Of a stretch of DNA of 64,000 nucleotides, positions 37,797-63,977 are shown in pieces. The DNA is taken from positions 190,744 to 254,743 of the IMG/VR virus record IMGVR_UViG_3300007770_001284. One strand, written 5' to 3'. Both the position numbers and the translations under genes were made by a program. Each line of letters opens with the position of its first letter. The first letter of the stretch is position 1. Under the pieces are notes generated by a model. It had not been told where the DNA came from and made no database searches. It was given only the letters and a program-made list of their open reading frames with translations.

Positions 37797-37803
37797 ATAT
37801 TTA
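37797..37803 (+). promoter_or_regulatory. Putative late-promoter motif ATATTTA at the head of the effector array
   Basis: Upstream of GAGGG SD and ATG 37820. Confidence 0.55.
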
Positions 37804-37819
37804 AGATTGAGGGAATTTC

Positions 37820-38575: not shown

Positions 38576-38605
38576 ACGTTGGCCGCCCTAATAGGACGTG
38601 CCGGA

Positions 38606-39145: not shown

Positions 39146-39405
39146 TGAAAATCACAAGACGACAGATTAGACAGATCATTGCTGAAGAGCTTGCGCTCGA
39201 TCTTGAGGTTGGAGACATCATACTAACCGGTCGCTTCAAGAACAAGCGAACGGTGGTCAAGAAACTTGGTACCGATGACCTGGGCCAACCGACTGTGAAT
39301 GGCATGAAAGTGTTAGCGTTCAGGATTGAAAAATTGATGCCGAAAGAGAAGTGGAGCAAGAAGACAATCGCCGAACTTGAGAAGGAAGAGGAAGATAAGA
39401 AATGA
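39145..39405 (+). CDS. Leader-bearing small protein
   Basis: MKITRRQIRQIIAEE; LEVGDIILTGRFKNK. Confidence 0.65.
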   Translation: MKITRRQIRQIIAEELALDLEVGDIILTGRFKNKRTVVKKLGTDDLGQPTVNGMKVLAFRIEKLMPKEKWSKKTIAELEKEEEDKK

Positions 39406-40082: not shown

Positions 40083-40549
40083 TGCAATTATTGAACGAAT
40101 ATGCAAGAGAGATTATGACATCGCAGGTTGACTCCGGATGTATTGATCTACGTGTACGTGGCTTTAAAGTTAACGCTGAGCTGGCAACAACGACAGAAGC
40201 AAGAAATCGAGGCTTGATGCATAGACAATCGATGAATGAGGATGATGGTATGTTGTTCGTTTTCCCTGACACCGACTATCGTTCATTTTGGATGGAGAAT
40301 ACCTTCATCCCGTTGTCGATTGCTTATCTAACAGAAGCTGGAAAAATTATTAATATAGAGCGGATGCATCCTTTTAACCGAACTTCTGTAAGGTCAACAG
40401 AGCCAGCAAAGTATGCGCTAGAAATGAATGCTGGCTGGTTTAAGAAGCGAGGCGTTCAAGTTGGTGATGTTGTAAGTGGTATTTCTTCCATGAACGAGTC
40501 TATGCTCCGCGAGTACGTAAGAACTTTGCTAATAGAACAGAGCGGGTAA
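40079..40549 (+). CDS. DUF192-family protein with leader-like motifs at both ends
   Basis: RNRGLMHR, GMLFVF, FWMENTFIPLSIAY, YALEMNAGWF. Confidence 0.85.
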   Translation: MMQLLNEYAREIMTSQVDSGCIDLRVRGFKVNAELATTTEARNRGLMHRQSMNEDDGMLFVFPDTDYRSFWMENTFIPLSIAYLTEAGKIINIERMHPFNRTSVRSTEPAKYALEMNAGWFKKRGVQVGDVVSGISSMNESMLREYVRTLLIEQSG

Positions 40550-40552
40550 TTC

Positions 40553-43806: not shown

Positions 43807-45611
43807 GCTTGCTTCGAGAATATGTTAACGTCCCTCCAGAGGAAGAACTCCACCCAAGTCAGATGAAGACTGTCGGTGAGATCTTGGATCTTATCGAACG
43901 TATCCAAGAAGAAACAGACGAAGCCGGCCGTCGGGTGCGTAGTGCAAATGTCGGGATTGAATTCATAAAGATCGCCATGGGGGAGATACCACTCGTTGGT
44001 GGTGCGCTTGGTGCCGCAGATGGATTATTTGCCATGTACCAAGCGGGGAAGAATGAGGAACACACCTGGGCCGAGCTGGAAGAGTATCCCATTCTGGCTC
44101 GGATGAAGATGCACCCTTCTTTGGCCAAACACCTCGATCCTGTAACACTGAAAGAAATTGATAAAGCATATCAGGGCTATCTTCAGGGTCTTGGTCGCGA
44201 GACGCTAGTCAGCGAAATCACAGATATCGATAATTTTACGCATGATTGGATTATGGGTGATACAGACAGCAAGCTTAGCGTGGAGCTCCTACGTGAGTAC
44301 GTAAGAGAACAATTTCTACTTGAAAGAGAGGAAGCAGAAGCGTCCCTGCTTTCAGGGGTGAGTGACTTTATAGAGACTCGTCATTATGATGACGTGTTAG
44401 ATGCTGCGTTTAAACGCATAGCCCCTGGTTTAGTTCGTCATGTCATGGAGCAAGAAATCAACGAGGATGTTGCTGAATTTCTTGATGGCGCAATAGAGGG
44501 TCGGTGGGAGAAACAAAAAGGGTGGTCTTTTGAAGATCCAAGTCCAAAACAGTTGGGTCACTCTGAGGATTCTGCCGATTACATATTGGGGTACTCATGG
44601 GGCTGGAATAATGCAGACTCGTGGGAAGGTAATCGATTGCCGACCCAAGCCAGGAAAGAAGCAGTTGAGGCGCAGATCGCAGAATTTGAAGATCAAATAT
44701 CTGAGCAGATGGTCATTGCGGCGCTGGAAACTGCCAATGAAAAGGTTAACCCCGTTAAGCTCATCAAAAAGGCAATTGGTGCAATTCGTAGTGCAGTTCG
44801 GGAAGAGGGTCTTTCTGGTGGCCTCAAAAAGGGCTTGCCTATCGCGATAGGAATTATTGTAGGGGAGGCACTCGATAATTTTATTATACCCATGGCATTC
44901 TTTTCGATGACCGGCATTCCCATCCCTCCGCTTCCGATTGGAGTGGGGGAAATCATTAATCCCGTAGTGATCAGTATGGTCGGTGCCGATATAGAGTCAG
45001 ACGAACTAGTTGATGAGCTAGGGTGGTACGAGGAAGAGTACGGAGAGGCATCTTCGCTGGGTCCTCGAGAGACGAACGAGTTACGTGCGTATATACGAGA
45101 AGCGTTACTTACAGAGTATTGGCCTGCCCGTACAGAGGGCAAGAAAAATGTCTGGCGTGGCATGAAGATCAAGATGTCACCAGCTATTTTGGCTTCAAAG
45201 GTCCGTCAGTACATTAAGACTGGCGAAGAGAAAGGAATTACGCAGCAAGAATTGATAAGATTTTTGCTTGGCCGTCTTGAGGGCGAAAGTACGGGTGCAT
45301 CATGGTCGCTCAGCTTTGATGTTGCTGTTAGTTTTGCAGATGCCTGGGGAGCAACAAACCGTGGCGCCGAACTCCACGTCATATTTCAAGCCACGGTCGA
45401 TGAAGAAGCTGGATACGATCCTCAGGCTGCAGGCGAAGAGCCCGGCTTGTTTTACGATGAGGCAGAAGTAAGGTTTAAGCCTGGCGCTGAGATACCTCTC
45501 ACTGGAATTTACGTCTTTATCAAGTCTAAGGATCAGTGGGCCAAGCAAAGGACTCAGTTCCGGCCTCTAATGATAAAGGCAGAAGACAATCCGATGATGG
45601 TAAAGGCATGA
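43803..45611 (+). CDS. Multidomain protein: helical module, unknown module and R-S-E ADP-ribosyltransferase
   Basis: VWRG, ASWSLSFDVAVSF, EAE; three leader motifs. Confidence 0.7.
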   Translation: MSLLREYVNVPPEEELHPSQMKTVGEILDLIERIQEETDEAGRRVRSANVGIEFIKIAMGEIPLVGGALGAADGLFAMYQAGKNEEHTWAELEEYPILARMKMHPSLAKHLDPVTLKEIDKAYQGYLQGLGRETLVSEITDIDNFTHDWIMGDTDSKLSVELLREYVREQFLLEREEAEASLLSGVSDFIETRHYDDVLDAAFKRIAPGLVRHVMEQEINEDVAEFLDGAIEGRWEKQKGWSFEDPSPKQLGHSEDSADYILGYSWGWNNADSWEGNRLPTQARKEAVEAQIAEFEDQISEQMVIAALETANEKVNPVKLIKKAIGAIRSAVREEGLSGGLKKGLPIAIGIIVGEALDNFIIPMAFFSMTGIPIPPLPIGVGEIINPVVISMVGADIESDELVDELGWYEEEYGEASSLGPRETNELRAYIREALLTEYWPARTEGKKNVWRGMKIKMSPAILASKVRQYIKTGEEKGITQQELIRFLLGRLEGESTGASWSLSFDVAVSFADAWGATNRGAELHVIFQATVDEEAGYDPQAAGEEPGLFYDEAEVRFKPGAEIPLTGIYVFIKSKDQWAKQRTQFRPLMIKAEDNPMMVKA

Positions 45612-46159
45612 ACCTCCTCCGTGAATGCATAGAAGAGCTGCTCCGTGAGTCTCATTTTCCATTGACAGGTGGAGAGAAGGTGCGCATCCACCACAGCCGA
45701 CAAGACACTAGAGACGGTAAAGAACCACAGATCAGTGGTTTTTCACAGAGGGTTGGCTACAAGCCCAGTGGTCTGTGGTATGAATGCAAAGACGGTAGCT
45801 CGATAGACTGGCTGGAATTTTGTAGGACGGGCCTAACGGACGGTGCAAGTAGATATGATAGCGCATATAACGTTGTCTTGAATGATTATGAAATCTTGTT
45901 CATAACAGATAATCATGATTTTAAGAAATTTGAGAAGATGTACGGCGTTCCCAATAGCTACGGGGACATCAAGATTGACTGGCCAAAGGTCGCAAGTCAT
46001 TATGACGGTATTGAGATCTGTCCCTATCTATGGAAAATGCGACCGGACTCGGACTGGTATTACGGGTGGGACGTAGCGTCAGGGTGCGTGTGGAACGCGT
46101 CTGGAATAAAAGAACTTATAAGTGCAGAGGAGGGTTGTGAAGATGAATCCGCTGCGTGA
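45608..46159 (+). CDS. Leader-bearing protein, possible ART-like fold
   Basis: MNLLRECIEELLRES; IHHS, KPSGLWY, WDVASGCVW. Confidence 0.55.
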   Translation: MNLLRECIEELLRESHFPLTGGEKVRIHHSRQDTRDGKEPQISGFSQRVGYKPSGLWYECKDGSSIDWLEFCRTGLTDGASRYDSAYNVVLNDYEILFITDNHDFKKFEKMYGVPNSYGDIKIDWPKVASHYDGIEICPYLWKMRPDSDWYYGWDVASGCVWNASGIKELISAEEGCEDESAA

Positions 46160-46625
46160 GTATATAAGAGAGATCTTGACCGAAGACGCTGACTCTTCTG
46201 GAGTCACTATCAGAGTACAAAATTATGGAAATGGAGTCGCAGCTGCTATAATGATGAGCGGAATGAGAATAGGCTCAGCTACAGCTCGCGAAGTTCTTAA
46301 GTACGAGCACTGTACAGAAGATGTAGAGAAACTCAAAGCTCAGGGTTATGATTACGATAATCCGAAATTTCCGACCCTGGGGCCGACGCTATATGCGATA
46401 GGAGAATCTCATGTGGATGAAGCTTTTAGGGGATTTGGATACGGTAAGAAGTTATACAAGGCAATAATTGAAGAGATTGGTAAGCATGTTGGTAATCGTG
46501 GTGCCTTTGTCGGCGCTGATGAGTGTGCAGCGGGTTCTACTTCCGGCACCGCGCAGCGAGTCTGGAAGTCGGTGGGTCGTGATTACCCATCATCTGGTAA
46601 TGTAGTTTATGTGGGACCAAAATGA
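46143..46625 (+). CDS. Leader-bearing GNAT acetyltransferase
   Basis: MNPLREYIREILTED; VDEAFRGFGYGKKLY. Confidence 0.75.
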   Translation: MNPLREYIREILTEDADSSGVTIRVQNYGNGVAAAIMMSGMRIGSATAREVLKYEHCTEDVEKLKAQGYDYDNPKFPTLGPTLYAIGESHVDEAFRGFGYGKKLYKAIIEEIGKHVGNRGAFVGADECAAGSTSGTAQRVWKSVGRDYPSSGNVVYVGPK

Positions 46626-47266
46626 ACCTGCTTCGCGAATATATCCGAGCTCTGCTCACCGAAGCTGCCAAGACCGTGGAAGATCTTCCTGAGGGTGCTT
46701 TCGTGACAATACTAAAAAGGTACGGCGGTTCATCAGTGTTCGTATACATCGGCGATGAGAAGGGAAATCGGTGGAGGACTAGAGAGGAGCACGGGGAGAG
46801 GTATGATAATTCCATACACGCAGGAATAGAAATTGCCAAGCCAAGACCGTCAGAGACCGGACCTTGTGGCGATGCATTCGTGGTGGAAGGTTCTGGAGCA
46901 ACTCACGGTTGGGGTCCGTTAGTATATGATGTTGCAATTGAGTACGCATCGCTTGACGGATCTGGCGGCTTAATTTCAGATAGAAGTTCGGTTTCTCCTT
47001 ATGCTCGACGTGTATGGGAATACTATATGAACAACCGACCGGACGTCACAGCGCATCAATTAGATGACATGAAAGATACGCTAACTCCAGAATGGGAAGA
47101 TAACTGCCAGCAGTGGATAGCCATGAAGACAACGGTACCAGCATTCACCGCAGAAAAATCTGATGATACTCGCTGGGTTGATTCACCGCTCAGTAAGAGA
47201 TACACGGCACCTCCCAAAACCATCGATGCGCTTCGTGCAGCTGGAAAACTGGTGGAGATTGAATAA
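46622..47266 (+). CDS. Leader-bearing GNAT-like protein
   Basis: MNLLREYIRALLTEA; GWGPLVY, SPYARRVW. Confidence 0.6.
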   Translation: MNLLREYIRALLTEAAKTVEDLPEGAFVTILKRYGGSSVFVYIGDEKGNRWRTREEHGERYDNSIHAGIEIAKPRPSETGPCGDAFVVEGSGATHGWGPLVYDVAIEYASLDGSGGLISDRSSVSPYARRVWEYYMNNRPDVTAHQLDDMKDTLTPEWEDNCQQWIAMKTTVPAFTAEKSDDTRWVDSPLSKRYTAPPKTIDALRAAGKLVEIE

Positions 47267-47730
47267 TGAACCTTCTCCGTGAATACATAAGCGAGCTTTT
47301 GACAGAGATAAATCTTGGTCAGGGCTATGGGATAGAATATACAGCATTTGTTCTGGACGACGCGTCACATCAGAAGCTAGCCGCTTTTGCTCCCGAAGGC
47401 TGGAAAGTCTTTGCTCATCACATGACGATTATTAATCCACCCAACCAGAAATTACGGTTACCGTCGCAATGGCTTGACCAAGACCTTTGCGTGAGAGTCG
47501 TGGGAATTGCACAATCGGCTCAGGTCATGACTGCGCTAGTTGATCTGGAAGGATTACCTCTTCCGATGAAGGGACCAGAATATCCTCACATCACTATTGC
47601 TACGAATCCAGCAGAGGGTGGCAAGCCTGCGATGTCTAATTGGAAGTTTAAGCCAGTTATCGATAAGCATAATTTTGAGGCTATTACCTCAATCGTTGTG
47701 TGCGGCAGAATAGAGGAAATATTAAGGTGA
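47266..47730 (+). CDS. Leader-bearing 2H phosphoesterase
   Basis: MNLLREYISELLTE; HHMTI and PHITI (two HxT motifs). Confidence 0.75.
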   Translation: MNLLREYISELLTEINLGQGYGIEYTAFVLDDASHQKLAAFAPEGWKVFAHHMTIINPPNQKLRLPSQWLDQDLCVRVVGIAQSAQVMTALVDLEGLPLPMKGPEYPHITIATNPAEGGKPAMSNWKFKPVIDKHNFEAITSIVVCGRIEEILR

Positions 47731-48401
47731 GCTTACTTCGCGAATACATCAGTGAGGTGCTGCAAGTGACTGCTCGAGTGCAACCCGAGTCCCAGATATT
47801 CTGTGACATGGACGGCGTTTTGGTAAATTTTGAAGATATGATTGTGAGATTTATCAACGGTCTTTTGGGCGGTGGCATCTCTCCAGGGATTGAAATTACG
47901 AAGGGTTACGAGAAGAGGCTAGCAAAAGTACGCGGAGAGCTCGGTCCAGATTGGCGCGCAAAGGGTCGTCCTGATTTAGATATTAAGTCGGTTCGAAATT
48001 TTATGATGGGTGCTGTTGGAGCAAATCCTGGTCCTATATTTGCTGAGATGAAGCCACATGCTGACGCTCTGGAAAAACTTTGGCCATTTCTGACGGGGAC
48101 TGGTCGGACTGTGAATATACTGACTGCTGAAATTAGGGCGAGAGAGGGAGCTGTTATGACAACGGCCGAAGGGAAGGAATTGTGGATACACAGGTGGCTT
48201 AAGCCTCAACCTTCTCAAATTATTATGTCACCAGCCAAACAGAAAGCCAGGTATGCAACGACCAACGGCATTCCCAACATACTTATTGATGATAAACTTA
48301 CGACCGTCGACAGCTGGAATGCCGCCGGCGGAATTGGTATCTGGCATCTGCCGGGCGGAAGCGTAGACACTGTGGAACAGCTAAAGGAATTGGGCGTATG
48401 A
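47727..48401 (+). CDS. Leader-bearing HAD 5'(3')-nucleotidase-like protein
   Basis: GTG-SLLREYISEVL; FCDMDGVL, ILT, K, LIDDK. Confidence 0.8.
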   Translation: MSLLREYISEVLQVTARVQPESQIFCDMDGVLVNFEDMIVRFINGLLGGGISPGIEITKGYEKRLAKVRGELGPDWRAKGRPDLDIKSVRNFMMGAVGANPGPIFAEMKPHADALEKLWPFLTGTGRTVNILTAEIRAREGAVMTTAEGKELWIHRWLKPQPSQIIMSPAKQKARYATTNGIPNILIDDKLTTVDSWNAAGGIGIWHLPGGSVDTVEQLKELGV

Positions 48402-50521
48402 AAACTCAGTTGCACATATACGATTTTGATGCAACTCTTTTCATGAGCCCGATGCATCCCGACGATTGGGAAGGTCACATCGGTCATTGGTACGATACGC
48501 TACAATCGTTGTCACCGCCCTGTGTAATCGATCCTCCCAATGATTTGTGGATAGGCAGCACAGTGTCTAGTGCACATAGCAGTATAGCCGACCCCAATGT
48601 ATATGCGATTTTAATGACAGGTCGCACAAGAAAACCTGAATTAGTTGGTCGGATAGCAGAGCTTCTTGCTATGGGAGGGCTAACGTTTGAAGAGATCTTG
48701 CTTAAGCCCACTGGAGATGTTAGGACTCTGCCGTGGAAATCTTCAATGATTGAAAAGCTAGCTGAAAAATTGCCTGACTTACAAGAAGTACATATCTGGG
48801 AAGATAGAGCAGACCATCTACAGGCTTTTGTTAAGCTTGTAGAATCTATGGGACTCACAGCGGTACCGCACTTTGTTAATGTTGTGCTCAATGCGCCCTG
48901 CGATTTAGGGAGTGTACAGCCCGACGTCGACCCTGGCGCTGTGATGGATCTCCCAGTGTTGAGTAAGCAGAATGAAAATTTAGTAAGACGATACATCAAG
49001 CTTTGTTTGGAAAAAACCGTCCGAAGCCAGAAAGACAAACGTGTCCTGTATCACATTAATCGCTTTCGTCCCGCTCGTCCCCAGCCGAAAATGTCGTATT
49101 TTCAAGAGTGGGACCCGGATGCAATTGACCCGGACACGCATGAAAGAACAGGCGACTATGTAGACGTTCCAGGAACCGACAACTGGCAACGACACTGGCT
49201 TGATAGTCCAGTTAAGTCCGGCGTTTTCTTAACCCCCAACCCAATTGATATAGCGATCAATCACGGTAGATCTGGTCACGTATACGCCTATAAAGTACCA
49301 CAGTGGGTTATAGCTAAATCAGGTGGTTTACATCGATATGATCATGGTTCCGAAGTACTAGTTCCTGAAGATGTCTGGAACGAGGCGGGTAAAGAGATCG
49401 AGTTCATGGGTAAGAGTATGGACAAGGAAGAGTTGTGGGATGAGATGATGCCTTCCCTGTATGGACGTGGCCACCACCGGCCAGCAACAAAACCATCCTG
49501 GATGTCCGGTGAAGAATTAAAGCAATGGAAAAAGGGTCAAAGTAAATTTAATCTCTCTGGCTTAAGAGCAACACGACATCCCGAAGATGTAATCAAAATG
49601 CTTACGTCAGATGAACAGCGAAAGGCGATTGAAGCGATTGAAGCGAAGAAAGAGGATATTCCTGGCTTTATTGAAAAAGGCCCAAGAGACAAAAAGGGAA
49701 TTGTGGTTCCGCCATTTGGACAACTATTAGACAAGAAAGACGAAGAGCTCTTGGCTTTGCTGAACAAACACCTGAACGAAGATATATTACGTGGGTACGT
49801 GAGGGCTCTATTGATCGAAAAATCATTAACTGGCCGGAAGCTTGAGAAGGTCGCAACATTGATAGCTGATGAAGTTATCGAATATCTTTTAGATGAAGAC
49901 CTCAGGGGTGCGTTTGCGGCACAGGGTCCGCTTGGGTTTCAAGTAGAAGTTGAGTTACCAGAAGCAGTGTTGTGGCTGCGAAATGTGTATGTGAAAATGG
50001 AGCCAGCAGATATTTTTAACAGCGATGCAAGCTATGAATTTGATCTAGATGCGACTGATGAGCAGCGAGAAGAATCAGATATTCGAATTAATCTTCAAAT
50101 GCCAACAGACTACTCAGACGAAGAAGTAGAAAAGCTTAAAGTAGAAATTGAAGCTGATATTCGCCACGAGCTAGAACATTCAGGACAGTCCACAGATGTC
50201 CTAATGGATGTACAGAGGAACGTCCCGGATTCTGAGATATGGAAATCCTTAGATCGTGCTGATTATTACTACACAAGTGAGGCTGAGGTGCCCTCATACG
50301 TGTCCAGCCTTGTTCTTAAATCTAAGAGGCATGAGTCGCATGCAGCGGATGAAATTGATGAAGACCTCAATAAGATCTACGCTACAGGACTAAGCAAGGG
50401 CTACTCTGAAGAAGAGTTGTCCCCCCTGATGACAAAGATTAGAGACACTTGGCAGTATTATTTAATGTCTCGGTGGCCTGAGCAAGAATGGCCGATTGAA
50501 TTTAGGCCAGAAAATGGGTAA
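48398..50521 (+). CDS. Multidomain protein: HAD phosphatase, ART-like domain and zincin metallopeptidase
   Basis: YDFDATL/WEDR; LYH/VFLT; RHELEH; linkers NENLVRRYIKLCLE and NEDILRGYVRALLIE. Confidence 0.72.
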   Translation: MKTQLHIYDFDATLFMSPMHPDDWEGHIGHWYDTLQSLSPPCVIDPPNDLWIGSTVSSAHSSIADPNVYAILMTGRTRKPELVGRIAELLAMGGLTFEEILLKPTGDVRTLPWKSSMIEKLAEKLPDLQEVHIWEDRADHLQAFVKLVESMGLTAVPHFVNVVLNAPCDLGSVQPDVDPGAVMDLPVLSKQNENLVRRYIKLCLEKTVRSQKDKRVLYHINRFRPARPQPKMSYFQEWDPDAIDPDTHERTGDYVDVPGTDNWQRHWLDSPVKSGVFLTPNPIDIAINHGRSGHVYAYKVPQWVIAKSGGLHRYDHGSEVLVPEDVWNEAGKEIEFMGKSMDKEELWDEMMPSLYGRGHHRPATKPSWMSGEELKQWKKGQSKFNLSGLRATRHPEDVIKMLTSDEQRKAIEAIEAKKEDIPGFIEKGPRDKKGIVVPPFGQLLDKKDEELLALLNKHLNEDILRGYVRALLIEKSLTGRKLEKVATLIADEVIEYLLDEDLRGAFAAQGPLGFQVEVELPEAVLWLRNVYVKMEPADIFNSDASYEFDLDATDEQREESDIRINLQMPTDYSDEEVEKLKVEIEADIRHELEHSGQSTDVLMDVQRNVPDSEIWKSLDRADYYYTSEAEVPSYVSSLVLKSKRHESHAADEIDEDLNKIYATGLSKGYSEEELSPLMTKIRDTWQYYLMSRWPEQEWPIEFRPENG

Positions 50522-51332
50522 CTTCGAAAAATTTAAGGTGCTTGGGTATATCCGTCCAGCTGAGGTATTTTTTACGTTAGGCGAATGGCGTACCGTTGTG
50601 GAAGAATTAATAGAGCTTCAGTCCCGTGGATTCGACACGAGGTCAGGTAAAATCAGCTGTAAACATATGTCTTTTTGCACACAAGAAGATATGGATCGAT
50701 TCGTACAACTTATTGCAAAATTCTGGGGCTATCAGCTCACAGTAGAGGTGGATAGATATGACCTCCTGACAAGCAAAAATGTTCTTGATTTCATAGAGGA
50801 CTTCGTGAACCATCGCTTTTGGGGGTTCGAGAATGAATTTAGCCATTACTTCCCAGACGTCTCTAAATTGAAGTTTGCATACTTTTATTCTCGTGGGGAT
50901 ATCGAACCATATGTGATGTTGGACGATGAATACACGACGCAGCTTTATGGTACCCTGGAAAATCCAGCAGATCTATGGCACTTTACAAGCCCGGATGGGT
51001 TAGATCGTTTGTCCCGCGCGATAGAAGCTGGAGAGCAATTTGATATTTCAACTTTCACTGTAGCTGAGCGGATGTTTTTCAGAAAGACTTCCACTCTTAC
51101 TGTTAGGTTAGTAGGAAATGTAAGGGCTGCGTTCCGTAGCGATATAAAGTCTTTGGCTCTGGATAACGGCAGACGAGCGTGCAACATGTATCGCCTTGAG
51201 TATCCCGGTAGGGCAGCGAATAATATTTGCTATGATTTAGACAAGTGCTTAGATCCAGAGGGCGTACAGACTGGATTATGGAATGAGTATATTGCAACGC
51301 CGCTCGAGATTATAAGCGTCGAATCATCTTAA
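50514..51332 (+). CDS. Hypothetical protein
   Basis: 272 aa ORF; LWHFT motif of unclear meaning. Confidence 0.6.
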   Translation: MGNFEKFKVLGYIRPAEVFFTLGEWRTVVEELIELQSRGFDTRSGKISCKHMSFCTQEDMDRFVQLIAKFWGYQLTVEVDRYDLLTSKNVLDFIEDFVNHRFWGFENEFSHYFPDVSKLKFAYFYSRGDIEPYVMLDDEYTTQLYGTLENPADLWHFTSPDGLDRLSRAIEAGEQFDISTFTVAERMFFRKTSTLTVRLVGNVRAAFRSDIKSLALDNGRRACNMYRLEYPGRAANNICYDLDKCLDPEGVQTGLWNEYIATPLEIISVESS

Positions 51333-52052
51333 GGCATGTCGGATTCTGGCAACGTGATCAGCGCTCAGTTCATGCATATAAACAAGGTCTTCTAGTACCT
51401 GCCTCGTTTCATCGTATTCCTGTACACCGACCGCAACGACTATACCCACGATGTCTCCTTGAGCATTGAACACGCCGCTACCAGAGTAGCCGAACCAAAT
51501 AAACCCATGCAGCAGAACAGCCCTATATCCGTCTTCATAACCTGTAACATATGCTCTTGTTGTTAACATGTCGTAGCTAGCCGGATAACCGCTGTATACC
51601 ACTTCGTCTCCGACGCTTAATTGACGATTATGCCTGGAAACATTAACTGCTTTTCTAGAGTTCAATCTCGGTATTTTCAACAATGCGATGTCATGAGTTT
51701 CTGATTTCCATATTACTTGACCAACGACTTTCTCTGCTCCGGTTGAAACATAAAAAATATTAGAATCATCGACAACATGTCGAGCAGTTAGAACAGCGTA
51801 GTGGTCGTTGTGCTTGATATACGTTCCCGATCCATGTCCGCCGCTTAAGCCTTGAACAGCTACAGAGCTGTGACGGCTTGTTCTTTCGTTCATTCGAGTT
51901 GAGGACACCGTCTGGATAATTGCGGGACGGGGAGATGTTGTGTTTGCGATTACTTTTGGTGCTTCTGCGTGCACTTTCGGTGTGTTGAAAAATGTAATGC
52001 AAAAAACTGCAGATACAGACAGAAAAATTGCTATGAAAAATGTTCTTGTCAT
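51324..52052 (-). CDS. Trypsin-like serine protease with signal peptide
   Basis: LTARHVV, DIALL, GYSGSGVF. Confidence 0.85.
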   Translation of the reverse strand: MTRTFFIAIFLSVSAVFCITFFNTPKVHAEAPKVIANTTSPRPAIIQTVSSTRMNERTSRHSSVAVQGLSGGHGSGTYIKHNDHYAVLTARHVVDDSNIFYVSTGAEKVVGQVIWKSETHDIALLKIPRLNSRKAVNVSRHNRQLSVGDEVVYSGYPASYDMLTTRAYVTGYEDGYRAVLLHGFIWFGYSGSGVFNAQGDIVGIVVAVGVQEYDETRQVLEDLVYMHELSADHVARIRHALR

Positions 52053-53292: not shown

Positions 53293-53607
53293 ATGTATGT
53301 AAGAGATGCAAACGTTGGTGATGTGATTCGTGTTGTCGGTGATAATAAGGGTGTTCGACAAAGCATTTTTCGTATATCACAAGAAGAAAGAGACGAAGCG
53401 CGTAAGCATGGTTTTATGATTGGATTTGTTCGTCATTTCTGGAAAGGTAATCCTGACAAGCCATATGACATGGTATATCTTGGTCCAGTAAGCACAAGGA
53501 TTCCCGTGGCTGGCCTTTTTAAACATCATTTATTTTTGACTCCAGATGGTACGTACGGGATAGAGGGATATGACTTTCGATATTTGGAGAAAATTACAGG
53601 GCGATAG
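53293..53607 (+). CDS. Hypothetical protein
   Basis: MYVRDANVGD...; its stop codon lies inside the tRNA. Confidence 0.55.
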   Translation: MYVRDANVGDVIRVVGDNKGVRQSIFRISQEERDEARKHGFMIGFVRHFWKGNPDKPYDMVYLGPVSTRIPVAGLFKHHLFLTPDGTYGIEGYDFRYLEKITGR

Positions 53608-53675
53608 CTCAATTTGGTCAGAGCAACGGTCTCATAAACCGTGGGTTCCGGGTTCAAGTCCCGGTCGCCCTACCA
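53598..53675 (+). tRNA. tRNA with CAT anticodon (probable Ile2, alternatively Met)
   Basis: Full cloverleaf, ACGGT-CTCATAA-ACCGT, encoded CCA; adjacent to tilS. Confidence 0.9.
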
Positions 53676-54691: not shown

Positions 54692-54767
54692 GGGCCGTTA
54701 GCTCAACAGGTAGAGCAAAAGACTTTTAATCTTTAGGTTCAGGGTTCGAGTCCCTGGCGGCTCACCA
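54692..54767 (+). tRNA. tRNA-Lys(TTT)
   Basis: Cloverleaf, anticodon loop CTTTTAA, encoded CCA. Confidence 0.92.
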
Positions 54768-54809: not shown

Positions 54810-54882
54810 TGGGGTGTAGCATAATTGGCAGTGCACCGGGTTGTTACCCCGGAGGTTGGTGGTTCGAATCCACCCGCCCCAG
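54810..54882 (+). tRNA. tRNA-Asn(GTT), no encoded CCA
   Basis: CCGGG-TTGTTAC-CCCGG; U1-A72; discriminator G followed by CCT. Confidence 0.88.
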
Positions 54883-54891
54883 CCTTGGTAC

Positions 54892-58589: not shown

Positions 58590-58665
58590 GCCTCCTTAGC
58601 TCAGTGGATAGAGCACCGGCCTTCTAAGCCGTAGGTCGCAGGTTCGAATCCTGCAGGGGGTGCCA
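58590..58665 (+). tRNA. tRNA-Arg(TCT)
   Basis: Cloverleaf, loop CTTCTAA, encoded CCA. Confidence 0.92.
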
Positions 58666-58684: not shown

Positions 58685-58843
58685 ATGGCAAGGAATTTTT
58701 TAAGCTCAAGTAGGTTTAGCTTGTTTTGTGCGGTCTTGAATGTCGCATTTGCCCTACAGGCGTTTTCACACGGTAGCTGGATATTTGGAGCGATTTGCAC
58801 AGTTTTTGCATGCCTTTGCTTTAGCAATTACAAGCGTGCATAA
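58685..58843 (+). CDS. Small two-TM protein (52 aa, not in the ORF track)
   Basis: TAATG overlap with tdk. Confidence 0.5.
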   Translation: MARNFLSSSRFSLFCAVLNVAFALQAFSHGSWIFGAICTVFACLCFSNYKRA

Positions 58844-59397
58844 TGAAAAATAGGTTCGTCATTTTCTGTGGTCCGATGTTCGGCGGAAAGACGTCGAAGT
58901 TGCTCAGCGCGATCGATCGATACAGTTATCAAAAAAGAACAATCCTCGCGTTTAAGCCCTGCGTTGATGATCGGTATGACAATAATTCCATTGTTACTCA
59001 CACTGGCGGAAATGTCGCAGCAGCTGTCGTTGACAATGGTGAAGACATCCTTGCTAGCGTAGAGATCTTTACTTCCCCCATCGTGATTGCGGTTGATGAA
59101 GCTTTCATGATACCCGGCTCGGGAAAAGCTTTGGTTGAGCTCTACAACCGCGGTCACACTATACTAATTTCGAGCCTCCAGCTTTCTTCTAGCGGTGAGG
59201 CCTATGGTGAAATTGCGCAGATGATGCCATACGCAACAAAGATCGAAATATGTCCCGCTGTGTGTACCATTTGCGCTGCTGATGCCTATTACACACAGAA
59301 GGTTGGGGGACGACAAGACCATGAAATAGAAGTGGGCGGCGCTGATTTGTATCAGCCCCGTTGTTTTAATCATTTCAACATTAACGAATTTAAGTAG
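58843..59397 (+). CDS. tdk: Thymidine kinase
   Basis: GPMFGGKT, KP..DDRY, VDEAF, CTIC, VGGADLYQPRCFNHF. Confidence 0.92.
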   Translation: MKNRFVIFCGPMFGGKTSKLLSAIDRYSYQKRTILAFKPCVDDRYDNNSIVTHTGGNVAAAVVDNGEDILASVEIFTSPIVIAVDEAFMIPGSGKALVELYNRGHTILISSLQLSSSGEAYGEIAQMMPYATKIEICPAVCTICAADAYYTQKVGGRQDHEIEVGGADLYQPRCFNHFNINEFK

Positions 59398-59406
59398 GGA
59401 GTAATT

Positions 59407-59844
59407 GTGATTGGGCGAAATAAGACGATTGGAATAATAGCTGGAAATTTTGATGTAATTCATCCAGGATATATTCGATATTTTCGTGATGCAAAAGAAA
59501 ATGCCTGTGAACACTTGATTATTGCACTTCACGTTGACCCCACTGTTGAAAACACTGATAAGTTTCCACCTGTTTTAACTGTTGAGGAAAGAACAGAGAT
59601 CTTGATGGCGATCAAGTATGTTGACGAAGTTGTGTGTTACGATACAGAAGCAGACTTACTTAACACTCTAAAGATAGTCAAACCCAGCGTCCGTGTTCTT
59701 GGGTCAGATTATCAGGGCAAGCGATATACGGGTGACGATCTTGGAATTCCCGTTTATTATCACGTTCGTGACCACGATTGGTCAACGACAAAATTTAAGA
59801 ATGAGATAGCAGATCAGGTCATAAAACAAAAAAAGTTATGGTGA
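59407..59844 (+). CDS. Cytidylyltransferase (TagD/RfaE-like)
   Basis: GNFDVIHPGY, ERTEIL..IKYVDEV, GSDY, STT. Confidence 0.85.
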   Translation: MIGRNKTIGIIAGNFDVIHPGYIRYFRDAKENACEHLIIALHVDPTVENTDKFPPVLTVEERTEILMAIKYVDEVVCYDTEADLLNTLKIVKPSVRVLGSDYQGKRYTGDDLGIPVYYHVRDHDWSTTKFKNEIADQVIKQKKLW

Positions 59845-61845: not shown

Positions 61846-63756
61846 ATGGGTGCTCTCGGTGGACATATGGCTCATCTTCATGAGTCGCTAGAATTAACAT
61901 TTAGTGAGCTTTCAGATATCCTTGCTCGCGTCGCTGATGCTGATATAGAGGCAACTGAAAAGGTAGACGGTCAGAACCTCTTCTTGACAGTCAATCAAGC
62001 TGGTGACGTTCAAACAGCTCGTAACGCTGGAGACCTTAAAAAGGGTGGTATGACGCCAGAAGAATTTGCAAGCAAGTGGGCAGGCCATCCTGCAGAGGGT
62101 GCTTTCACAAAGGGGTTCGAAGCGATTAAGCAGGCTATTTCTACCCTGGGTCCTACTGCACAAGTACTTTTTGCGGACGGCGCAAGATATGTCAATATGG
62201 AAGTGATGTATCCAGGTAACCCTAATTTAATTGTATACGATGCGGGAAGTGTGGTACTGCACAACTTCAACACCTTCGACCCGGCTGGTGAGCCTGTGGA
62301 CGACCCTGATGCCAGGGCAGCATTTCAAGAATTCTCCACAGCGTTAGATGCGGCAGAAATAGACGTTGACGGTGAAACATGGACTGTGTGGGGGCCAGTT
62401 GCAGTTCAATTAGAACAACTTGCTTCAGGTGAGCCGCTGGCAGAAGTGCAGGAAGCTATAGCTCGAATTGCTTCTCCTGTAGGGATGGATGCTACCCTGG
62501 AGGATTTAGCGGAGCTCCGCTTGAGGGCAACTGCAGAACGTGGAGGTATTCCCGAAGACAGAATTCAAGATGTTCTCGATGCTGCTTTTCAACGTCCGGG
62601 TGCTAAAAAAATAATTGCGATTAAGAAGGGCTTGCCCAAAGACCAGCAAAAGCTTGTTTCAAAGCTCGGCGCAAAGGCAAATGCATACTCTGCTATTTCT
62701 GCTACATTACGTCCTCTTGAGCTGGCGATTAACGATTTTGCCATTGAAGTTCTCAGGGGAATGGAAAGCTTTTTTGTTTCGGACACTGATACAGAGCTAC
62801 AGCGACAGAGGGCTGAACTCCAGGGTGCGATTGATTTTCTTGAAGGGCTAGCTGGATCCGGTGACGAAAAAATTGGTGCGCTGGTAGATAAGCAGCTTGA
62901 GAAACTTAAGAACATTGAAGATGTTGCTTCGACTATGGAGGGGATTGTTTTCGAGCACCCCCCGGGTAGTGGTAATTTAAAAAAGCTGACAGGCACATTC
63001 GCTATGGCAAACCAGCTTGTTGGGGGAGCTAGAAGAAAAGGGTGGACCCCAGAAGAACCACAGGAAGAATCTTTGTTACGTGGTTACGTAAGAGACCTGA
63101 TTTATGAAGCTATTTCGAGCGAGCAGCCTCACGGCTCTGATCATCGGGTAGGCTTGATTCCAGTTTCTGGCAAGCCGTACCACGCGGGGCACCACTATCT
63201 TGTGGAAAGAGCAGCTAGAGAGAACGATGAAGTAGTTCTTTTTGTGTCTACATCAAACAGACTAAGGAAGGGTCAATTTCCAATTTATGGCGCTGACATG
63301 AAGCGAGTGTGGCAGGAAGAGCTCGAACGAATTATGCCATCGAATGTTACTGTTGAATATGGCGGAAGCCCAGTGAGGAAGGTATACGACTTGATTGGAG
63401 ATGCATGTCAGGTCGGAGAGGGTCTAGAAACGTATGTTGTTTATTCAGACCCTACTGATACAAGCTTAAATTACCCTCCCGAAAGTCGAGACAAGTATAT
63501 GCAACCGCTGTGTGATGAAGGGCGAGTTATTTTCGCGGCAGAAGAAAACCCTGAGGCCTTCAGTCGTGGACAGGGTTCTCCCGATGTAAGTGGAACAGCG
63601 ATGAGGCAAGCCCTTCAGGACGGTAACTTTAAGGAGTTTGCGGTATCAATGCCAGCTGGGGTGAATGCTCAGAATATATGGAATATTCTTACAAAGGTTA
63701 ACGAGAGCCACAAGAGGGTTTCTTTGAGCGAAGCTATCTTTGGTGGAACGTTCTGA
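61846..63756 (+). CDS. ATP-dependent (RNA) ligase-like domain fused to a HIGH-family nucleotidyltransferase
   Basis: TEKVDGQN, MEV, EGIVF, KLTG; linker EESLLRGYVRDLIYE; KPYHAGH, SGTAMR. Confidence 0.65.
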   Translation: MGALGGHMAHLHESLELTFSELSDILARVADADIEATEKVDGQNLFLTVNQAGDVQTARNAGDLKKGGMTPEEFASKWAGHPAEGAFTKGFEAIKQAISTLGPTAQVLFADGARYVNMEVMYPGNPNLIVYDAGSVVLHNFNTFDPAGEPVDDPDARAAFQEFSTALDAAEIDVDGETWTVWGPVAVQLEQLASGEPLAEVQEAIARIASPVGMDATLEDLAELRLRATAERGGIPEDRIQDVLDAAFQRPGAKKIIAIKKGLPKDQQKLVSKLGAKANAYSAISATLRPLELAINDFAIEVLRGMESFFVSDTDTELQRQRAELQGAIDFLEGLAGSGDEKIGALVDKQLEKLKNIEDVASTMEGIVFEHPPGSGNLKKLTGTFAMANQLVGGARRKGWTPEEPQEESLLRGYVRDLIYEAISSEQPHGSDHRVGLIPVSGKPYHAGHHYLVERAARENDEVVLFVSTSNRLRKGQFPIYGADMKRVWQEELERIMPSNVTVEYGGSPVRKVYDLIGDACQVGEGLETYVVYSDPTDTSLNYPPESRDKYMQPLCDEGRVIFAAEENPEAFSRGQGSPDVSGTAMRQALQDGNFKEFAVSMPAGVNAQNIWNILTKVNESHKRVSLSEAIFGGTF

Positions 63757-63889: not shown

Positions 63890-63977
63890 GCGGGTATGGT
63901 GAAATTTGGTAAACACAAGGGGCTTAAAACCCCTCGACCATTAGGTCTTGCCGGTTCAAGTCCGGCTACCCGTACCA
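63890..63977 (+). tRNA. tRNA-Leu(TAA)
   Basis: Long variable arm, loop CTTAAAA, encoded CCA. Confidence 0.92.

What the first reader, a model, noticed from the sequence alone, without database searches (positions are those of the whole stretch)
61846..63756. Ligase-like domain fused via the leader to an NMNAT/HIGH-type nucleotidyltransferase
Seen: covalent-NTase motifs I (TEKVDG), III (E), IV (EGIV) and V (K), then EESLLRGYVRDLIYE, then KPYHAGH..SGT.MR. Known: phages encode NAD-rebuilding enzymes against NAD-depleting defences. Inference: an RNA ligase plus an NAD- or cofactor-synthesising enzyme, co-packaged to support the ARTs or counter NADases.
Basis: partly seen in the sequence, partly recalled or inferred. 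Interest (0 to 1): 0.6.

Follow-up and report, generated by a model that had tools for sequence, protein, structure and literature searches.

The report
Phage RNA-ligase-like enzyme fused to nucleotidyltransferase
A marine jumbo-phage gene joins a very divergent RNA-ligase-type enzyme to a second nucleotide-transferring enzyme, a pairing kept in hundreds of uncultured phages and tied by a shared peptide tag to a neighbouring set of RNA-end-repair and ADP-ribosyltransferase genes; nobody has studied it, but it is a new variant of known enzyme kinds, not a new principle.

Summary
Residues 1-402 fold (pLDDT 89.6) as a covalent nucleotidyltransferase. In an unbiased scan of 48,161 PDB chains the six best matches are all ATP-dependent RNA ligases (Z 6.5-7.6). 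A ~165-residue helical insert splits the core, and no Pfam, PHROG or NCBIfam model detects it. Residues 428-636 fold as a NadD/PPAT-type HxGH nucleotidyltransferase (Z 12.4). Superfamily membership is met; NMNAT-specific models fail by a wide margin, and no NAMPT partner is in the record. The pairing is real biology: ligase→HIGH in 63 of the 148 best-scoring family clusters, the reverse order in others (including Microcystis phage Mel-JY01), and separate nearby genes in four phages. The "leader" is a position-independent amphipathic tag (LLREYIRxLLxE). It has 15 copies, all in this window and none in shuffles. It marks a P-loop kinase, a 2H-like phosphoesterase, HAD phosphatases, a CCA/poly(A)-type enzyme and ART-like modules. 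Here it is the ligase module's own C-terminal tail. Best reading: the sealing enzyme of a tagged RNA-repair kit, with the second domain's substrate unknown. NAD synthesis and capsid co-packaging remain untested.

The parts
61846..63756 (+). Single ORF of 636 aa (stop included): ligase-like domain, tag, HIGH nucleotidyltransferase domain
   Evidence: GGAG lies 10 nt upstream of the ATG. The N-terminus MGxxGGHM is conserved in homologues.
61846..63051 (+). Domain 1 (aa 1-402): divergent ATP-dependent RNA-ligase-type covalent nucleotidyltransferase
   Evidence: AF2 pLDDT 89.6, pTM 0.86. Best PDB matches: NgrRnl Z 7.6-7.8, T4 Rnl2 Z 7.4-7.5, TbREL1 Z 7.3, Trl1 Z 6.8. No Pfam, PHROG or NCBIfam hit.
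61954..61977 (+). Motif I, TEKVDGQN (aa 37-44); Lys39 is the predicted nucleotidyl acceptor
   Evidence: Invariant. hhalign places it on T4 Rnl2 EKIHGTN (K35), with Asn at +5 and Arg at +20 in both proteins.
62020..62022 (+). Arg59, candidate motif Ia
   Evidence: Invariant. Aligned to the Arg of T4 Rnl2 AKRTG.
62191..62211 (+). Motif III region, VNMEVMY (aa 116-122, Glu119)
   Evidence: E119 is invariant. It lies in strand 114-121 of the model. A local hhalign places it on T4 Rnl1 ANFEF (not significant on its own).
62431..62925 (+). All-helical insertion (aa ~196-360) inside the nucleotidyltransferase core
   Evidence: Secondary structure of the model. Only about 190 of 402 residues align to ligases, spanning residues 2..393.
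62938..62955 (+). Motif IV, EGIVFE (aa 365-370)
   Evidence: E365 and G366 are invariant, also in diverse relatives. Strand 366-370.
62977..62994 (+). Motif V, LKKLTG (aa 378-383, Lys380)
   Evidence: K380, T382 and G383 are invariant. Strand 378-381.
63064..63108 (+).
   Evidence: PSSM score 37.0 bits, but this copy was one of the ten seeds of the matrix. It is one of 15 copies in the genome; shuffles give 0. Homologous to the C-terminal tail of stand-alone ligases in L027, L029, L030 and L034.
63127..63753 (+). Domain 2 (aa 428-636): HxGH (HIGH) nucleotidyltransferase with a NadD/PPAT fold
   Evidence: AF2 pLDDT 89.5. NadD Z 12.4, PPAT Z 12.2. TIGR00125 scores 31.9 bits against a cut-off of 27.7.
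63172..63192 (+). KPYHAGH (aa 443-449): the HxGH motif
   Evidence: H446, G448 and H449 are invariant.
63589..63606 (+). SGTAMR (aa 582-587): the SxTxxR motif of the superfamily
   Evidence: R587 is invariant; S582 and T584 are at least 90% conserved.
63700..63753 (+). C-terminal tail NESHKRVSLSEAIFGGTF: a degenerate copy of the tag carried by stand-alone HIGH proteins
   Evidence: Stand-alone HIGH proteins of L026, L029, L030 and L034 end in tails such as NERYLRTYVRAIIAG. A SLxEALFGG tail is conserved in close homologues.
35169..36068 (-). Tag-bearing P-loop kinase (Zeta_toxin/AAA_33 type; Walker A GGPGSGKS)
   Evidence: Tag copy at 35981.
40553..42190 (+). Tag-bearing PolyA_pol-head nucleotidyltransferase (CCA-adding / poly(A) polymerase type)
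   Evidence: PF01743 at 9e-37. N-terminal tag MTLLRECVKEMLVES and a C-terminal ELRSYIRELL.
47266..47730 (+). Tag-bearing 2H-like phosphoesterase candidate (two HxT motifs)
   Evidence: HMTI and HITI. Weak tRNA_lig_CPD hit, E 0.012, below the cut-off. Tag at the N-terminus.
48398..50521 (+). Three-module protein with a HAD_SAK_1 phosphatase domain and internal tag copies
   Evidence: PF10307 at 1.7e-15. Tags at aa ~196 and ~464.
42187..45611 (+). Two multi-module proteins with internal tags and ART-like C-terminal modules (R..S..E pattern read by eye)
   Evidence: Sequence inspection and tags. No Pfam or PHROG hit, so the ART assignment is an inference.

Best explanation
The gene encodes a bifunctional enzyme that is conserved in many uncultured, mostly marine, tailed phages.

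Domain 1 (aa 1-402) is a very divergent member of the covalent nucleotidyltransferase superfamily, closest in shape and motif pattern to ATP-dependent RNA ligases of the Rnl2/Rnl5/REL1 type. By analogy, Lys39 would take AMP from ATP, pass it to a 5'-phosphate polynucleotide end, and the enzyme would then seal that end to a 3'-OH. A ~165-residue helical insert replaces the accessory domains of known ligases and probably binds the substrate.

Domain 2 (aa 428-636) is an HxGH/SxTxxR nucleotidyltransferase with the NadD/PPAT fold. It uses an NTP to nucleotidylate a phosphate- or carboxylate-bearing substrate that works in the same pathway as the ligase. The substrate is not known.

The peptide between the two domains is the ligase module's own C-terminal copy of a short amphipathic tag (LLREYIRxLLxE). 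The same tag marks a nearby set of genes: a P-loop kinase, a 2H-like and several HAD phosphoesterases, a CCA/poly(A)-type nucleotidyltransferase and ART-like modules. I therefore read the protein as the sealing component of a tag-linked RNA (probably tRNA) end-healing and sealing kit that protects translation from host ribonuclease defences. The tag would gather these proteins either into the prohead (T4 CTS-like) or into one complex.

Shown: the ORF, the motifs and their conservation, both folds, the domain coupling, and the tag's distribution.
Inferred: ligase chemistry, RNA as substrate, the repair role, and the tag's function.
For: Domain 1
- Confident model.
- In an unbiased scan of 48,161 PDB representatives the six best chains are RNA ligases (NgrRnl 7.6, T4 Rnl2 7.4, TbREL1 7.3, T4 Rnl2 full length 6.9, Trl1 6.8 and 6.5). 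DNA ligases come next and capping enzymes score lower (4.9).
- The EKxDGxN motif, with Asn at +5 and Arg at +20, matches the T4 Rnl2 spacing.
- Catalytic-type residues are invariant in 36, 62 and 40 relatives.
- 3 of 40 relatives weakly hit Pfam RNA_ligase. hhalign against T4 Rnl2 gives E 0.0018 over 149 columns.

Domain 2
- TIGR00125 above its cut-off; NadD and PPAT at Z ~12; HxGH and R587 invariant, with S582 and T584 at least 90% conserved.

Coupling of the two domains
- 557 or more homologues, the top 120 mostly with near-full coverage.
- 1786 family clusters.
- Among the best 148: 63 ligase→HIGH, at least 2 HIGH→ligase, 40 ligase alone.
- Reverse order in Mel-JY01 and in L043.
- Separate ligase and HIGH genes lie 1.6-7 kb apart in L026, L029, L030 and L034.

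Context
- 15 tag copies, all in window 35.9-49.8 kb plus this gene; 0 in shuffles.
- Tagged genes include PolyA_pol, HAD_SAK_1, DUF192, a Zeta/AAA_33 kinase and a 2H-like protein.
- No other ligase (PF01068, PF01653, PF09414, PF09511, RtcB) in the record.
- Five tRNA genes and a tmRNA gene nearby.
Against: - Fold Z-scores of 7-8 are middling by the tool's own calibration.
- No sequence model of any ligase family reaches significance on this protein.
- RNA versus DNA substrate is not resolved by any test here.
- In the other 40 loci the conserved neighbours are not RNA-repair genes: a trypsin-like peptidase, PhoH/PIN, PMM and a small cytidylyltransferase. The repair context therefore rests mainly on this window and on L029.
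- The 2H, ART and kinase-substrate assignments are weak or made by eye.
- Nothing shows what the HIGH domain acts on.
- The record is only about 75% complete, so absences are soft.
Confidence: 0.5

Rival explanations
1. The protein is an RNA ligase plus a true NMN/NaMN adenylyltransferase that rebuilds NAD+. Both are packaged in the capsid to feed the phage ADP-ribosyltransferases or to counter host NADase defences.
For: - The nearest profile and fold matches include archaeal NMNAT (8.7e-7) and NadD (Z 12.4), and phrog_3462 NMNAT at 1.7e-4.
- ART-like modules carry the same tag.
- HIGH-type NMNATs are known in jumbo phages (PMC7824862).
- The genome has a gp21-type prohead protease, and most tag copies end in (L/I)xE.
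Against: - NMNAT equivalog models are far below their cut-offs: 23.9 vs 341, 21.9 vs 127, 16.9 vs 181.
- PPAT ties with NadD.
- No NAMPT/NAPRTase is in the record, and the protein has no fused Nudix or kinase partner of the kind phage NMNATs carry.
- The persistent coupling to the ligase domain, in both orders and as neighbouring genes, is unexplained by NAD salvage.
Confidence: 0.17
2. Domain 1 is the phage's DNA ligase, sealing nicks in replication or repair, and has nothing to do with RNA repair. The HIGH domain supplies or recycles its nucleotide cofactor.
For: - No ATP- or NAD-dependent DNA ligase model matches anywhere in the 254-kb record, although the phage has its own DNA polymerase.
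- DNA ligases also appear among the fold matches at Z 5-6.8.
Against: - RNA ligases outrank DNA ligases in both fold searches.
- There is no OB domain after the nucleotidyltransferase core.
- Motif I is of the EKxxGxN, Rnl2-like form.
- The tag links the gene to CCA/poly(A)-type, HAD_SAK and 2H-like genes.
- The record is about 75% complete, so a DNA ligase may simply lie in the missing part, or the host LigA may be used.
Confidence: 0.13
3. The two domains form a two-enzyme end-activation pathway. The HIGH domain treats an RNA 5' end as its nucleotide substrate. One possibility is 5'-P RNA + ATP -> AppRNA, the NMNAT reaction with the RNA end in place of NMN. The other is pppA-RNA + NMN -> NAD-capped RNA. 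The ligase-like domain then carries out the joining step.
For: - HIGH nucleotidyltransferases nucleotidylate phosphates of nucleotide-like substrates (established chemistry of NMNAT and PPAT).
- The obligate, order-independent coupling with a polynucleotide-end enzyme is most simply explained by a shared substrate.
- ART-like modules in the same tagged set would fit a use of NAD-linked RNA.
Against: - No HIGH-family enzyme is known to act on polynucleotide 5' ends in this way.
- Lys39 and all ligase step-1 residues are retained, so the ligase needs no pre-adenylylated donor.
- There is no direct evidence of any kind.
Confidence: 0.08
4. The HIGH domain is a carboxylate-adenylating enzyme (CitC, PanC or TmcAL-like) that modifies RNA, for example at a tRNA anticodon-loop base, or modifies a cofactor. 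The ligase-fold domain is a binding or transfer module rather than a sealing enzyme.
For: - The best Pfam hits are Citrate_ly_lig (4.7e-5, above its cut-off) and Pantoate_ligase.
- TmcAL is among the Foldseek matches at 9e-4.
- Relatives are auto-named 'citrate lyase ligase family protein'.
Against: - These hits cover only the roughly 30-40 residues around HxGH.
- The whole-domain fold matches are NadD and PPAT.
- The ligase-type catalytic residues are under strict conservation, which argues for an active nucleotidyltransferase rather than a binding module.
Confidence: 0.07

Closest known systems
T4 Rnl2 / Naegleria NgrRnl (Rnl5) / trypanosome REL1 ATP-dependent RNA ligases
   Same: - Nucleotidyltransferase fold (Z 7.3-7.8 over about 190 residues).
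- Motif I EKxxGxN, with Arg at +20.
- Motifs III, IV and V in the same order.
   Different: - No significant sequence-profile match.
- A ~165-aa helical insert between motifs IIIa and IV.
- No Rnl2 C-terminal domain and no Rnl5 N-terminal domain.
- Only one conserved lysine in motif V.
- Fused or paired with a HIGH nucleotidyltransferase.
T4 Pnkp + Rnl1 and fungal/plant Trl1 (ligase-kinase-CPD) tRNA healing-and-sealing systems
   Same: The tagged gene set offers the same list of activities: a P-loop kinase, 2H-like and HAD phosphoesterases, and a ligase-type enzyme. Trl1-LIG is among the fold matches, Z 6.5-6.8.
   Different: - The components are separate, tag-bearing genes spread over about 28 kb.
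- No Pnkp, Rnl1, RtcB or Tpt1 model matches in the record.
- The kit has an extra HIGH nucleotidyltransferase and a CCA/poly(A)-type enzyme.
- No activity has been shown.
NadD / NMNAT / PPAT (HxGH nucleotidyltransferase superfamily; TIGR00125, PF01467)
   Same: The fold (Z 11.3-12.4), the HxGH and SxTxxR motifs, and a TIGR00125 score above its cut-off.
   Different: - It belongs to a virus-only clade.
- Every substrate-specific equivalog model fails.
- It is coupled to a ligase-fold domain instead of a Nudix, kinase or NAMPT partner.
'Cytidylyltransferase-like/DUF6267 domain-containing protein' (automatic database name); Microcystis phage Mel-JY01 WWT39297 'cytidylyltransferase like protein'
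   Same: - The same two-domain family. Atlas clusters that are nearest by shape (TM 0.85-0.86) carry PF01467 and PF19782.
- The Mel-JY01 C-terminal half is a full-length homologue of domain 1 (hhalign E 5e-36).
   Different: - The Pfam DUF6267 model itself does not match this window. It was also not among the families hit by 102 scanned relatives.
- Mel-JY01 has the domains in the reverse order and an altered HxGH.
- No function or paper is attached to these names.
T4 capsid targeting sequences and gp21 processing (IP proteins, Alt)
   Same: - A short terminal amphipathic peptide shared by unrelated enzymes, ART-like ones included.
- Most copies end in (L/I)xE.
- The genome has a gp21-type protease.
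- T4 Alt is processed at both ends, and T4 CTS are 10-20 residues long (PMC9026906, PMC5694885).
   Different: - The tag here is longer and has a different sequence.
- It occurs at N-termini, at C-termini and between modules.
- C-terminal copies in relatives end in ...AG/...VG without a Glu.
- There are no virion data.

Membership tests
Covalent nucleotidyltransferase superfamily (ATP/NAD ligases, capping enzymes) | Motif I KxDG with the nucleophilic lysine | tested here: met
   K39-V-D41-G42 is invariant in 20, 36 and 40 relatives and at least 90% conserved in 62 diverse ones.
Covalent nucleotidyltransferase superfamily (ATP/NAD ligases, capping enzymes) | Motifs III, IIIa, IV and V, collinear, on the strands of the nucleotidyltransferase fold | tested here: met
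   E119 (strand 114-121), H139 (strand 134-144), E365-G366 (strand 366-370) and K380 (strand 378-381) are all invariant. The assignment of each residue to a named motif is by analogy.
Covalent nucleotidyltransferase superfamily (ATP/NAD ligases, capping enzymes) | Nucleotidyltransferase fold | tested here: met
   In the scan of 48,161 chains, the six best matches, and every match in the top 50 that spans the whole domain, are ligases or capping enzymes (Z 7.6 to 4.7, 160-207 residues aligned). The Z values are middling.
Covalent nucleotidyltransferase superfamily (ATP/NAD ligases, capping enzymes) | Formation of a covalent enzyme-NMP adduct | not testable with these tools
   Needs a biochemical assay.
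Pfam RNA_ligase (PF09414, Rnl2 type) / RNA_lig_T4_1 (PF09511) | Significant match to the family profile | tested here: not met
   No hit at E <= 10 on the protein or the genome. 3 of 40 relatives reach E 0.004. hhalign against T4 Rnl2 gives E 0.0018, probability 14.6%.
ATP-dependent DNA ligases / mRNA capping enzymes | OB-fold domain following the nucleotidyltransferase domain | tested here: not met
   The model shows only helices after motif V (385-397), then the tag, then the Rossmann-like domain. PF01068 and PF01653 are absent.
HxGH (HIGH) nucleotidyltransferase superfamily (TIGR00125 / PF01467) | HxGH motif after strand 1, SxTxxR motif, Rossmann-like fold, and profile score above the cut-off | tested here: met
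   H446-A-G448-H449; S582-G-T584-x-x-R587. Z 12.4 to NadD and 12.2 to PPAT. TIGR00125 31.9 vs 27.7. PF01467 is below its cut-off on this protein (14.9 vs 21) but is matched by relatives.
NMN adenylyltransferase (NadR / NadM / archaeal NMNAT) | Score above the equivalog cut-off | tested here: not met
   TIGR01526 23.9 vs 341.15; NF002243 21.9 vs 127; TIGR01527 16.9 vs 181.2. The matches cover about 30-40 residues around HxGH.
NMN adenylyltransferase (NadR / NadM / archaeal NMNAT) | Genomic partner that makes NMN (NAMPT/NAPRTase), or a fused Nudix or ribosylnicotinamide kinase | tested here: not met
   No PF04095 match in the 254-kb record. No such domain in the protein. The record is about 75% complete.
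NMN adenylyltransferase (NadR / NadM / archaeal NMNAT) | NMN + ATP -> NAD+ activity | not testable with these tools
   Needs an enzyme assay.
T4-type capsid targeting sequence | Short terminal propeptide ending in a protease site after Glu, with a gp21-type protease encoded by the phage | tested here: inconclusive
   PF03420 protease at G000:145039-145461, 86.4 bits. Most tag copies end in (L/I)xE, by my reading. In this protein the tag is internal, and in relatives it is a C-terminal tail without Glu.
T4-type capsid targeting sequence | Presence of the protein in virions and observed cleavage | not testable with these tools
   Needs virion mass spectrometry of a cultured relative.

The most novel reading that the evidence does not exclude
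The LLREYIRxLLxE peptide may be a portable address code. With it, a group of marine phages would gather an arsenal into the capsid or into one complex: an RNA end-healing kinase and phosphoesterases, a CCA-type enzyme, ART-like effectors, and this ligase. Within that arsenal, the HIGH domain would act directly on RNA 5' ends, making AppRNA or an NAD-type cap, and would hand them to a new, sixth-type RNA ligase. That would be a two-enzyme end-activation and ligation pathway with no known precedent.
Probability: 0.1. Interest if true: 0.85.

Novelty: new variant of a known kind. Interest (0 to 1): 0.6.

Why it matters
If domain 1 is an active RNA ligase, it defines a large family that current sequence models cannot see. 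The family has at least 1786 clusters at 50% identity, and the phages carrying it are almost entirely uncultured. It would extend phage RNA-repair counter-defence well beyond T4-type Rnl1, Rnl2 and RtcB.

Its near-obligatory partnership with a HIGH nucleotidyltransferase has no counterpart in known repair systems, so it points to an unknown step in end processing or cofactor supply.

The shared peptide tag gives a simple handle for predicting which phage proteins act, or travel, together. It is directly testable by virion proteomics in Microcystis phage Mel-JY01, if that phage's proteins also carry the tag. New RNA ligases are also of practical use as molecular-biology reagents.

Tried and rejected
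- Complex prediction on the naturally separate ligase and HIGH proteins of L029 returned 'no answer' (score 0.00). It counts neither for nor against binding.
- Sequence-only searches of domain 1 against PDB gave only spurious hits: SUB2/DDX39 helicases, WD40 and designed repeats.
- hhalign of the shallow alignment A2 against T4 Rnl2 and Rnl1 was not significant (E 0.19 and 0.21). It did place motifs I and III correctly.
- The Pfam DUF6267 and RNA_ligase models do not match the genome.
- The genome-contig scan found a single MAG contig, so I cannot speak to cellular hosts. The scan used narrow peptide patterns.
- Conserved neighbours in 40 viral loci did not reveal a repair operon.
- A T4 late-promoter consensus is not enriched: 5 found against 2.7 expected. 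The promoter/terminator scan near the gene was at chance level.
- Nucleotide alignment of six tag copies shows no DNA-level conservation. I therefore rejected a recombination site or a repeat as the explanation for the tag.
- The paper that defined the SAK RNA-repair domains (Burroughs & Aravind 2016) is not held. What I say of it rests on the Pfam family title and on memory.
- No paper mentions DUF6267 or DUF5661.
- The reads tools were not used.
Full report
**Where it lies.** The window is the last 64 kb of a 254,743-bp IMG/VR virus record, estimated about 75% complete. GC is about 44%. The phage encodes its own DNA polymerase and a GroEL, and most of its proteins match no family.

**The observation.** Window 61846..63756 (+) is one uninterrupted ORF of 636 aa. 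A GGAG lies 10 nt upstream of the ATG.
- TEKVDGQN at aa 37-44
- Glu119 in VNMEVMY
- EGIVFE at aa 365-370
- LKKLTG at aa 378-383
- EESLLRGYVRDLIYE at aa 407-421
- KPYHAGH at aa 443-449
- SGTAMR at aa 582-587

The word search returned 557 homologues. The top 120 mostly cover nearly the full length at 41-89% identity, come largely from marine metagenomes, and sit on contigs of up to 300 kb. In 20 of them E38, K39, D41, G42, N44, R59, E119, H139, E365, G366, K380, H446, G448, H449 and R587 are invariant.

**Domain 1 (aa 1-402).** No Pfam, PHROG or NCBIfam model matches it, even at E <= 10.

An AlphaFold2 model built from a 36-sequence alignment is confident (pLDDT 89.6, pTM 0.86).
- Foldseek finds nothing below E 1e-3, but 20 of its top 20 rows are ATP-dependent RNA ligases.
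- VIA-align gives Z 7.8 to Naegleria NgrRnl, 7.5 to T4 Rnl2, 7.3 to TbREL1, 7.0 to T4 Rnl1 and 6.8 to Trl1.
- The independent scan of 48,161 PDB representatives gives RNA ligases as its six best chains. DNA ligases follow, and capping enzymes score lower (4.9).

The Z values are middling by the tool's own note. The coherence of the hit list, and the match of invariant residues to the ligase motifs, carry the argument.

Only about 190 residues align, spanning residues 2..393. Residues ~196-360 form a helical insert inside the core.

hhalign is not significant with the shallow alignment (E 0.19). It nevertheless puts EKVDGQN on T4 Rnl2 EKIHGTN, with the Asn at +5 and the Arg at +20 in register. 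It puts VNME on T4 Rnl1 ANFE. With a more diverse alignment the match to Rnl2 reaches E 0.0018 over 149 columns, and 3 of 40 relatives weakly hit Pfam RNA_ligase.

There is no OB domain. I conclude that domain 1 is a divergent RNA-ligase-type covalent nucleotidyltransferase. Its chemistry and its substrate are inferred.

**Domain 2 (aa 428-636).** The model is confident (pLDDT 89.5).
- Foldseek gives NadD, NMNAT, ATP sulfurylase, PPAT and TmcAL at E 8e-6 to 1e-3.
- VIA-align gives NadD at Z 12.4 and PPAT at Z 12.2, a tie.
- TIGR00125, the superfamily domain model, passes its cut-off (31.9 vs 27.7). All substrate-specific models fail by a wide margin: NMNAT 23.9 vs 341, 21.9 vs 127 and 16.9 vs 181; PanC, CitC and PPAT likewise.
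- The nearest Atlas clusters are virus-only 'cytidylyltransferase-like' or 'citrate lyase ligase family' proteins.

Membership in the HxGH superfamily is therefore met. NMNAT identity is not. The record also lacks a NAMPT/NAPRTase gene.

**The pairing of the two domains is selected.** An exhaustive profile search with domain 1 finds 1786 clusters at 50% identity (802 at E <= 1e-30). Of the best 148:

| Architecture | Clusters |
|---|---|
| Ligase followed by this HIGH domain | 63 |
| Reverse order | at least 2 |
| Ligase alone | 40 |
| Ligase with other or undetected partners | 35 |
| Fragments | 8 |

CTP_transf_like and Citrate_ly_lig are the only recurrent Pfam partners.

Microcystis phage Mel-JY01 protein WWT39297 has the HIGH-like half first and a full-length homologue of domain 1 second (hhalign E 5e-36). 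Its HIGH half matches only weakly.

In four phage loci (L026, L029, L030, L034) the ligase and a close homologue of this particular HIGH domain (E 1e-33 to 1e-73) are separate genes 1.6-7 kb apart on opposite strands.

Fusion in both orders, together with fission, is the classical sign of a shared pathway. A complex prediction for the L029 pair gave no verdict.

**The 'leader'.** A position matrix built from ten copies finds 15 sites at 14 bits or more in the 254-kb genome, against none in five codon-shuffled genomes. All 15 lie in window 35.9-49.8 kb or in this gene. Ten of the 15 are the seeds themselves.

The copies differ freely at synonymous positions, so selection acts on the peptide and not on the DNA.

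The tag sits in three kinds of place:
- at N-termini: ORFs starting at 38606, 40553, 45608, 46143, 46622, 47266 and 47727, and the kinase at 35169..36068(-)
- at C-termini: ORF 40013..40549, and a shortened copy at the end of 40553..42190
- between modules of multi-module proteins: 42187.., 43803.., 48398.., and the target

The stand-alone ligases of L027, L029, L030 and L034, and the stand-alone HIGH proteins of L026, L029, L030 and L034, all end in the same motif, for example ...EALLRTYIKSMILAG and ...ERYLRTYVRAIIAG. In the target, therefore, the junction peptide is the ligase module's C-terminal tail. The protein's own C-terminus (SLSEAIFGGTF) is a decayed copy of the HIGH module's tail.

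The hydrophobic pattern i, i+1, i+4, i+5, i+8, i+9 suggests a three-turn amphipathic helix (inference).

**What the tag marks.** The tagged genes include:
- a PolyA_pol-head (CCA-adding / poly(A) polymerase type) enzyme, 9e-37
- a HAD_SAK_1 'Swiss Army Knife RNA repair' phosphatase, 1.7e-15
- DUF192
- a Zeta_toxin/AAA_33 P-loop kinase with GGPGSGKS
- a 154-aa protein with two HxT motifs and a weak fungal tRNA-ligase CPD hit, a 2H candidate
- further HAD-like and GNAT-like proteins
- two large proteins whose C-terminal modules show an R..S..E pattern that I read by eye as ART-like

Kinase, phosphoesterases, an end-adding nucleotidyltransferase and a ligase together make up the activity list of RNA healing-and-sealing systems. 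Examples are T4 Pnkp with Rnl1, and Trl1 (established knowledge; see also PMC7824862).

The record has no other ligase of any known family. tRNA-Met, Lys(UUU), Asn, Arg(UCU) and Leu(UAA) genes and a tmRNA gene lie nearby. This is the basis for reading the protein as the sealing enzyme of a tagged RNA-repair kit.

The weak points are these:
- In other phages the conserved neighbours are not repair genes.
- Several of the assignments above are weak or made by eye.
- The HIGH domain's substrate is unknown.

**What the tag does.** Two readings survive.

1. A T4-like capsid targeting and processing signal.
   - The genome encodes a gp21-type prohead protease (PF03420, 86.4 bits).
   - Such proteases cut after Glu, and T4 CTS are 10-20-residue propeptides (PMC5694885).
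   - T4 Alt, an ART, is packaged and trimmed at both ends (PMC9026906).
   - Most copies here end in (L/I)xE.
2. A docking helix that gathers the enzymes into one complex.

The C-terminal copies that lack Glu argue against cleavage being universal. A trypsin-like peptidase recurs within 10 kb of the gene in 12 loci and in this window. Its role is unknown. I put packaging at roughly one in three.

**Comparison with what is known, and novelty.** Databases hold relatives only under automatic names, 'cytidyltransferase-like protein' and 'Cytidylyltransferase-like/DUF6267 domain-containing protein'. No paper mentions DUF6267. The DUF6267 model itself does not match this protein. I found no description of a ligase-fold/HIGH fusion in the jumbo-phage or polyvalent-protein surveys I read.

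The thing is therefore a new variant of known kinds. It is a new RNA-ligase-like family with a helical insert and a fixed HIGH-nucleotidyltransferase partner, and it carries a shared terminal tag.

**Confidence.**

| Claim | Confidence |
|---|---|
| Domain folds and superfamilies | ~0.9 |
| Functional coupling of the two domains | ~0.85 |
| RNA sealing / repair role | ~0.5 |
| DNA ligase | ~0.13 |

Noticed in passing
window 37422..37766 (-): A phage-encoded tmRNA gene, with tag peptide ANNNNHFEYALAA. It lies at the edge of the tagged gene cluster.
   Followed up: no
window 53598..53675, 54692..54767, 54810..54884, 58590..58665, 63890..63977 (+): tRNA genes for Met, Lys(UUU), Asn(GUU), Arg(UCU) and Leu(UAA). 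The last lies 134 nt after the target's stop. Several of these isoacceptors are, from memory, classic anticodon-nuclease targets.
   Followed up: no
window 35937..49822, 15 sites (e.g. 38606, 40553, 46622, 47266, 49778) and 63067: The peptide tag LLREYIRxLLxE occurs at N-termini, at C-termini and at module boundaries of about 13 genes. Related tags (ERLLREWVRRLLVEF, HKLIREYVREMLTEA, MKLLLENWREYINES) occur in other phage loci: L026, L029, L034, L016, L020, L031, L032.
   Followed up: partly
window 42187..43806 and 43803..45611 (+): Two multi-module proteins with internal tags. Their C-terminal modules show an R..S..E ART-like pattern (YRG..SSWT..EEE; WRG..SWS..EAE). The first also starts with a YHAT motif reminiscent of H-Y-E ART folds. 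They have no family hits.
   Followed up: partly
window 36117..37349 (-): A 410-aa protein with a weak Tubulin/FtsZ GTPase-domain match (E 7e-5, below the cut-off). It may be a phage tubulin.
   Followed up: no
window 51324..52052 (-); L007, L011, L014, L017, L020, L022, L028, L031, L036 and others: A trypsin-like serine peptidase (Trypsin_2, 9e-18) recurs within about 10 kb of the ligase-HIGH gene in 12 other phage loci. It could be a processing enzyme for tagged proteins; this was not tested.
   Followed up: partly
window 59407..59844 (+); 17 other loci: A second, small (145-aa) cytidylyltransferase-like protein (PF01467, 5e-12) is kept within about 8 kb of the ligase-HIGH gene in 17 loci. 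Thymidine kinase (58843..59397) lies next to it here and in L004-L006.
   Followed up: partly
G000:C1:145039-145461 (+), outside the window: A T4 gp21-type prohead protease (Peptidase_S77, 86.4 bits) in a phage whose other proteins are mostly unlike T4's.
   Followed up: partly
window 62010..62273, 62589..62996, 61912..62163 (-): Antisense ORFs inside the target are 'conserved' in 11-25 loci. They are shadows of the conserved sense gene, not genes.
   Followed up: yes
L003 (CAYQOJ010000100.1, MAG labelled uncultured Methylococcus sp.): This is the only hit in 185,579 species genomes: an 11-kb MAG contig carrying a ligase-HIGH gene. It is probably a binned phage or prophage fragment.
   Followed up: no
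window 27833..29416 (+) and 2660..6460 (+): A phage-encoded GroEL (phrog_5725, 1e-132) and a 1266-aa DNA polymerase (phrog_405, 2e-221).
   Followed up: no
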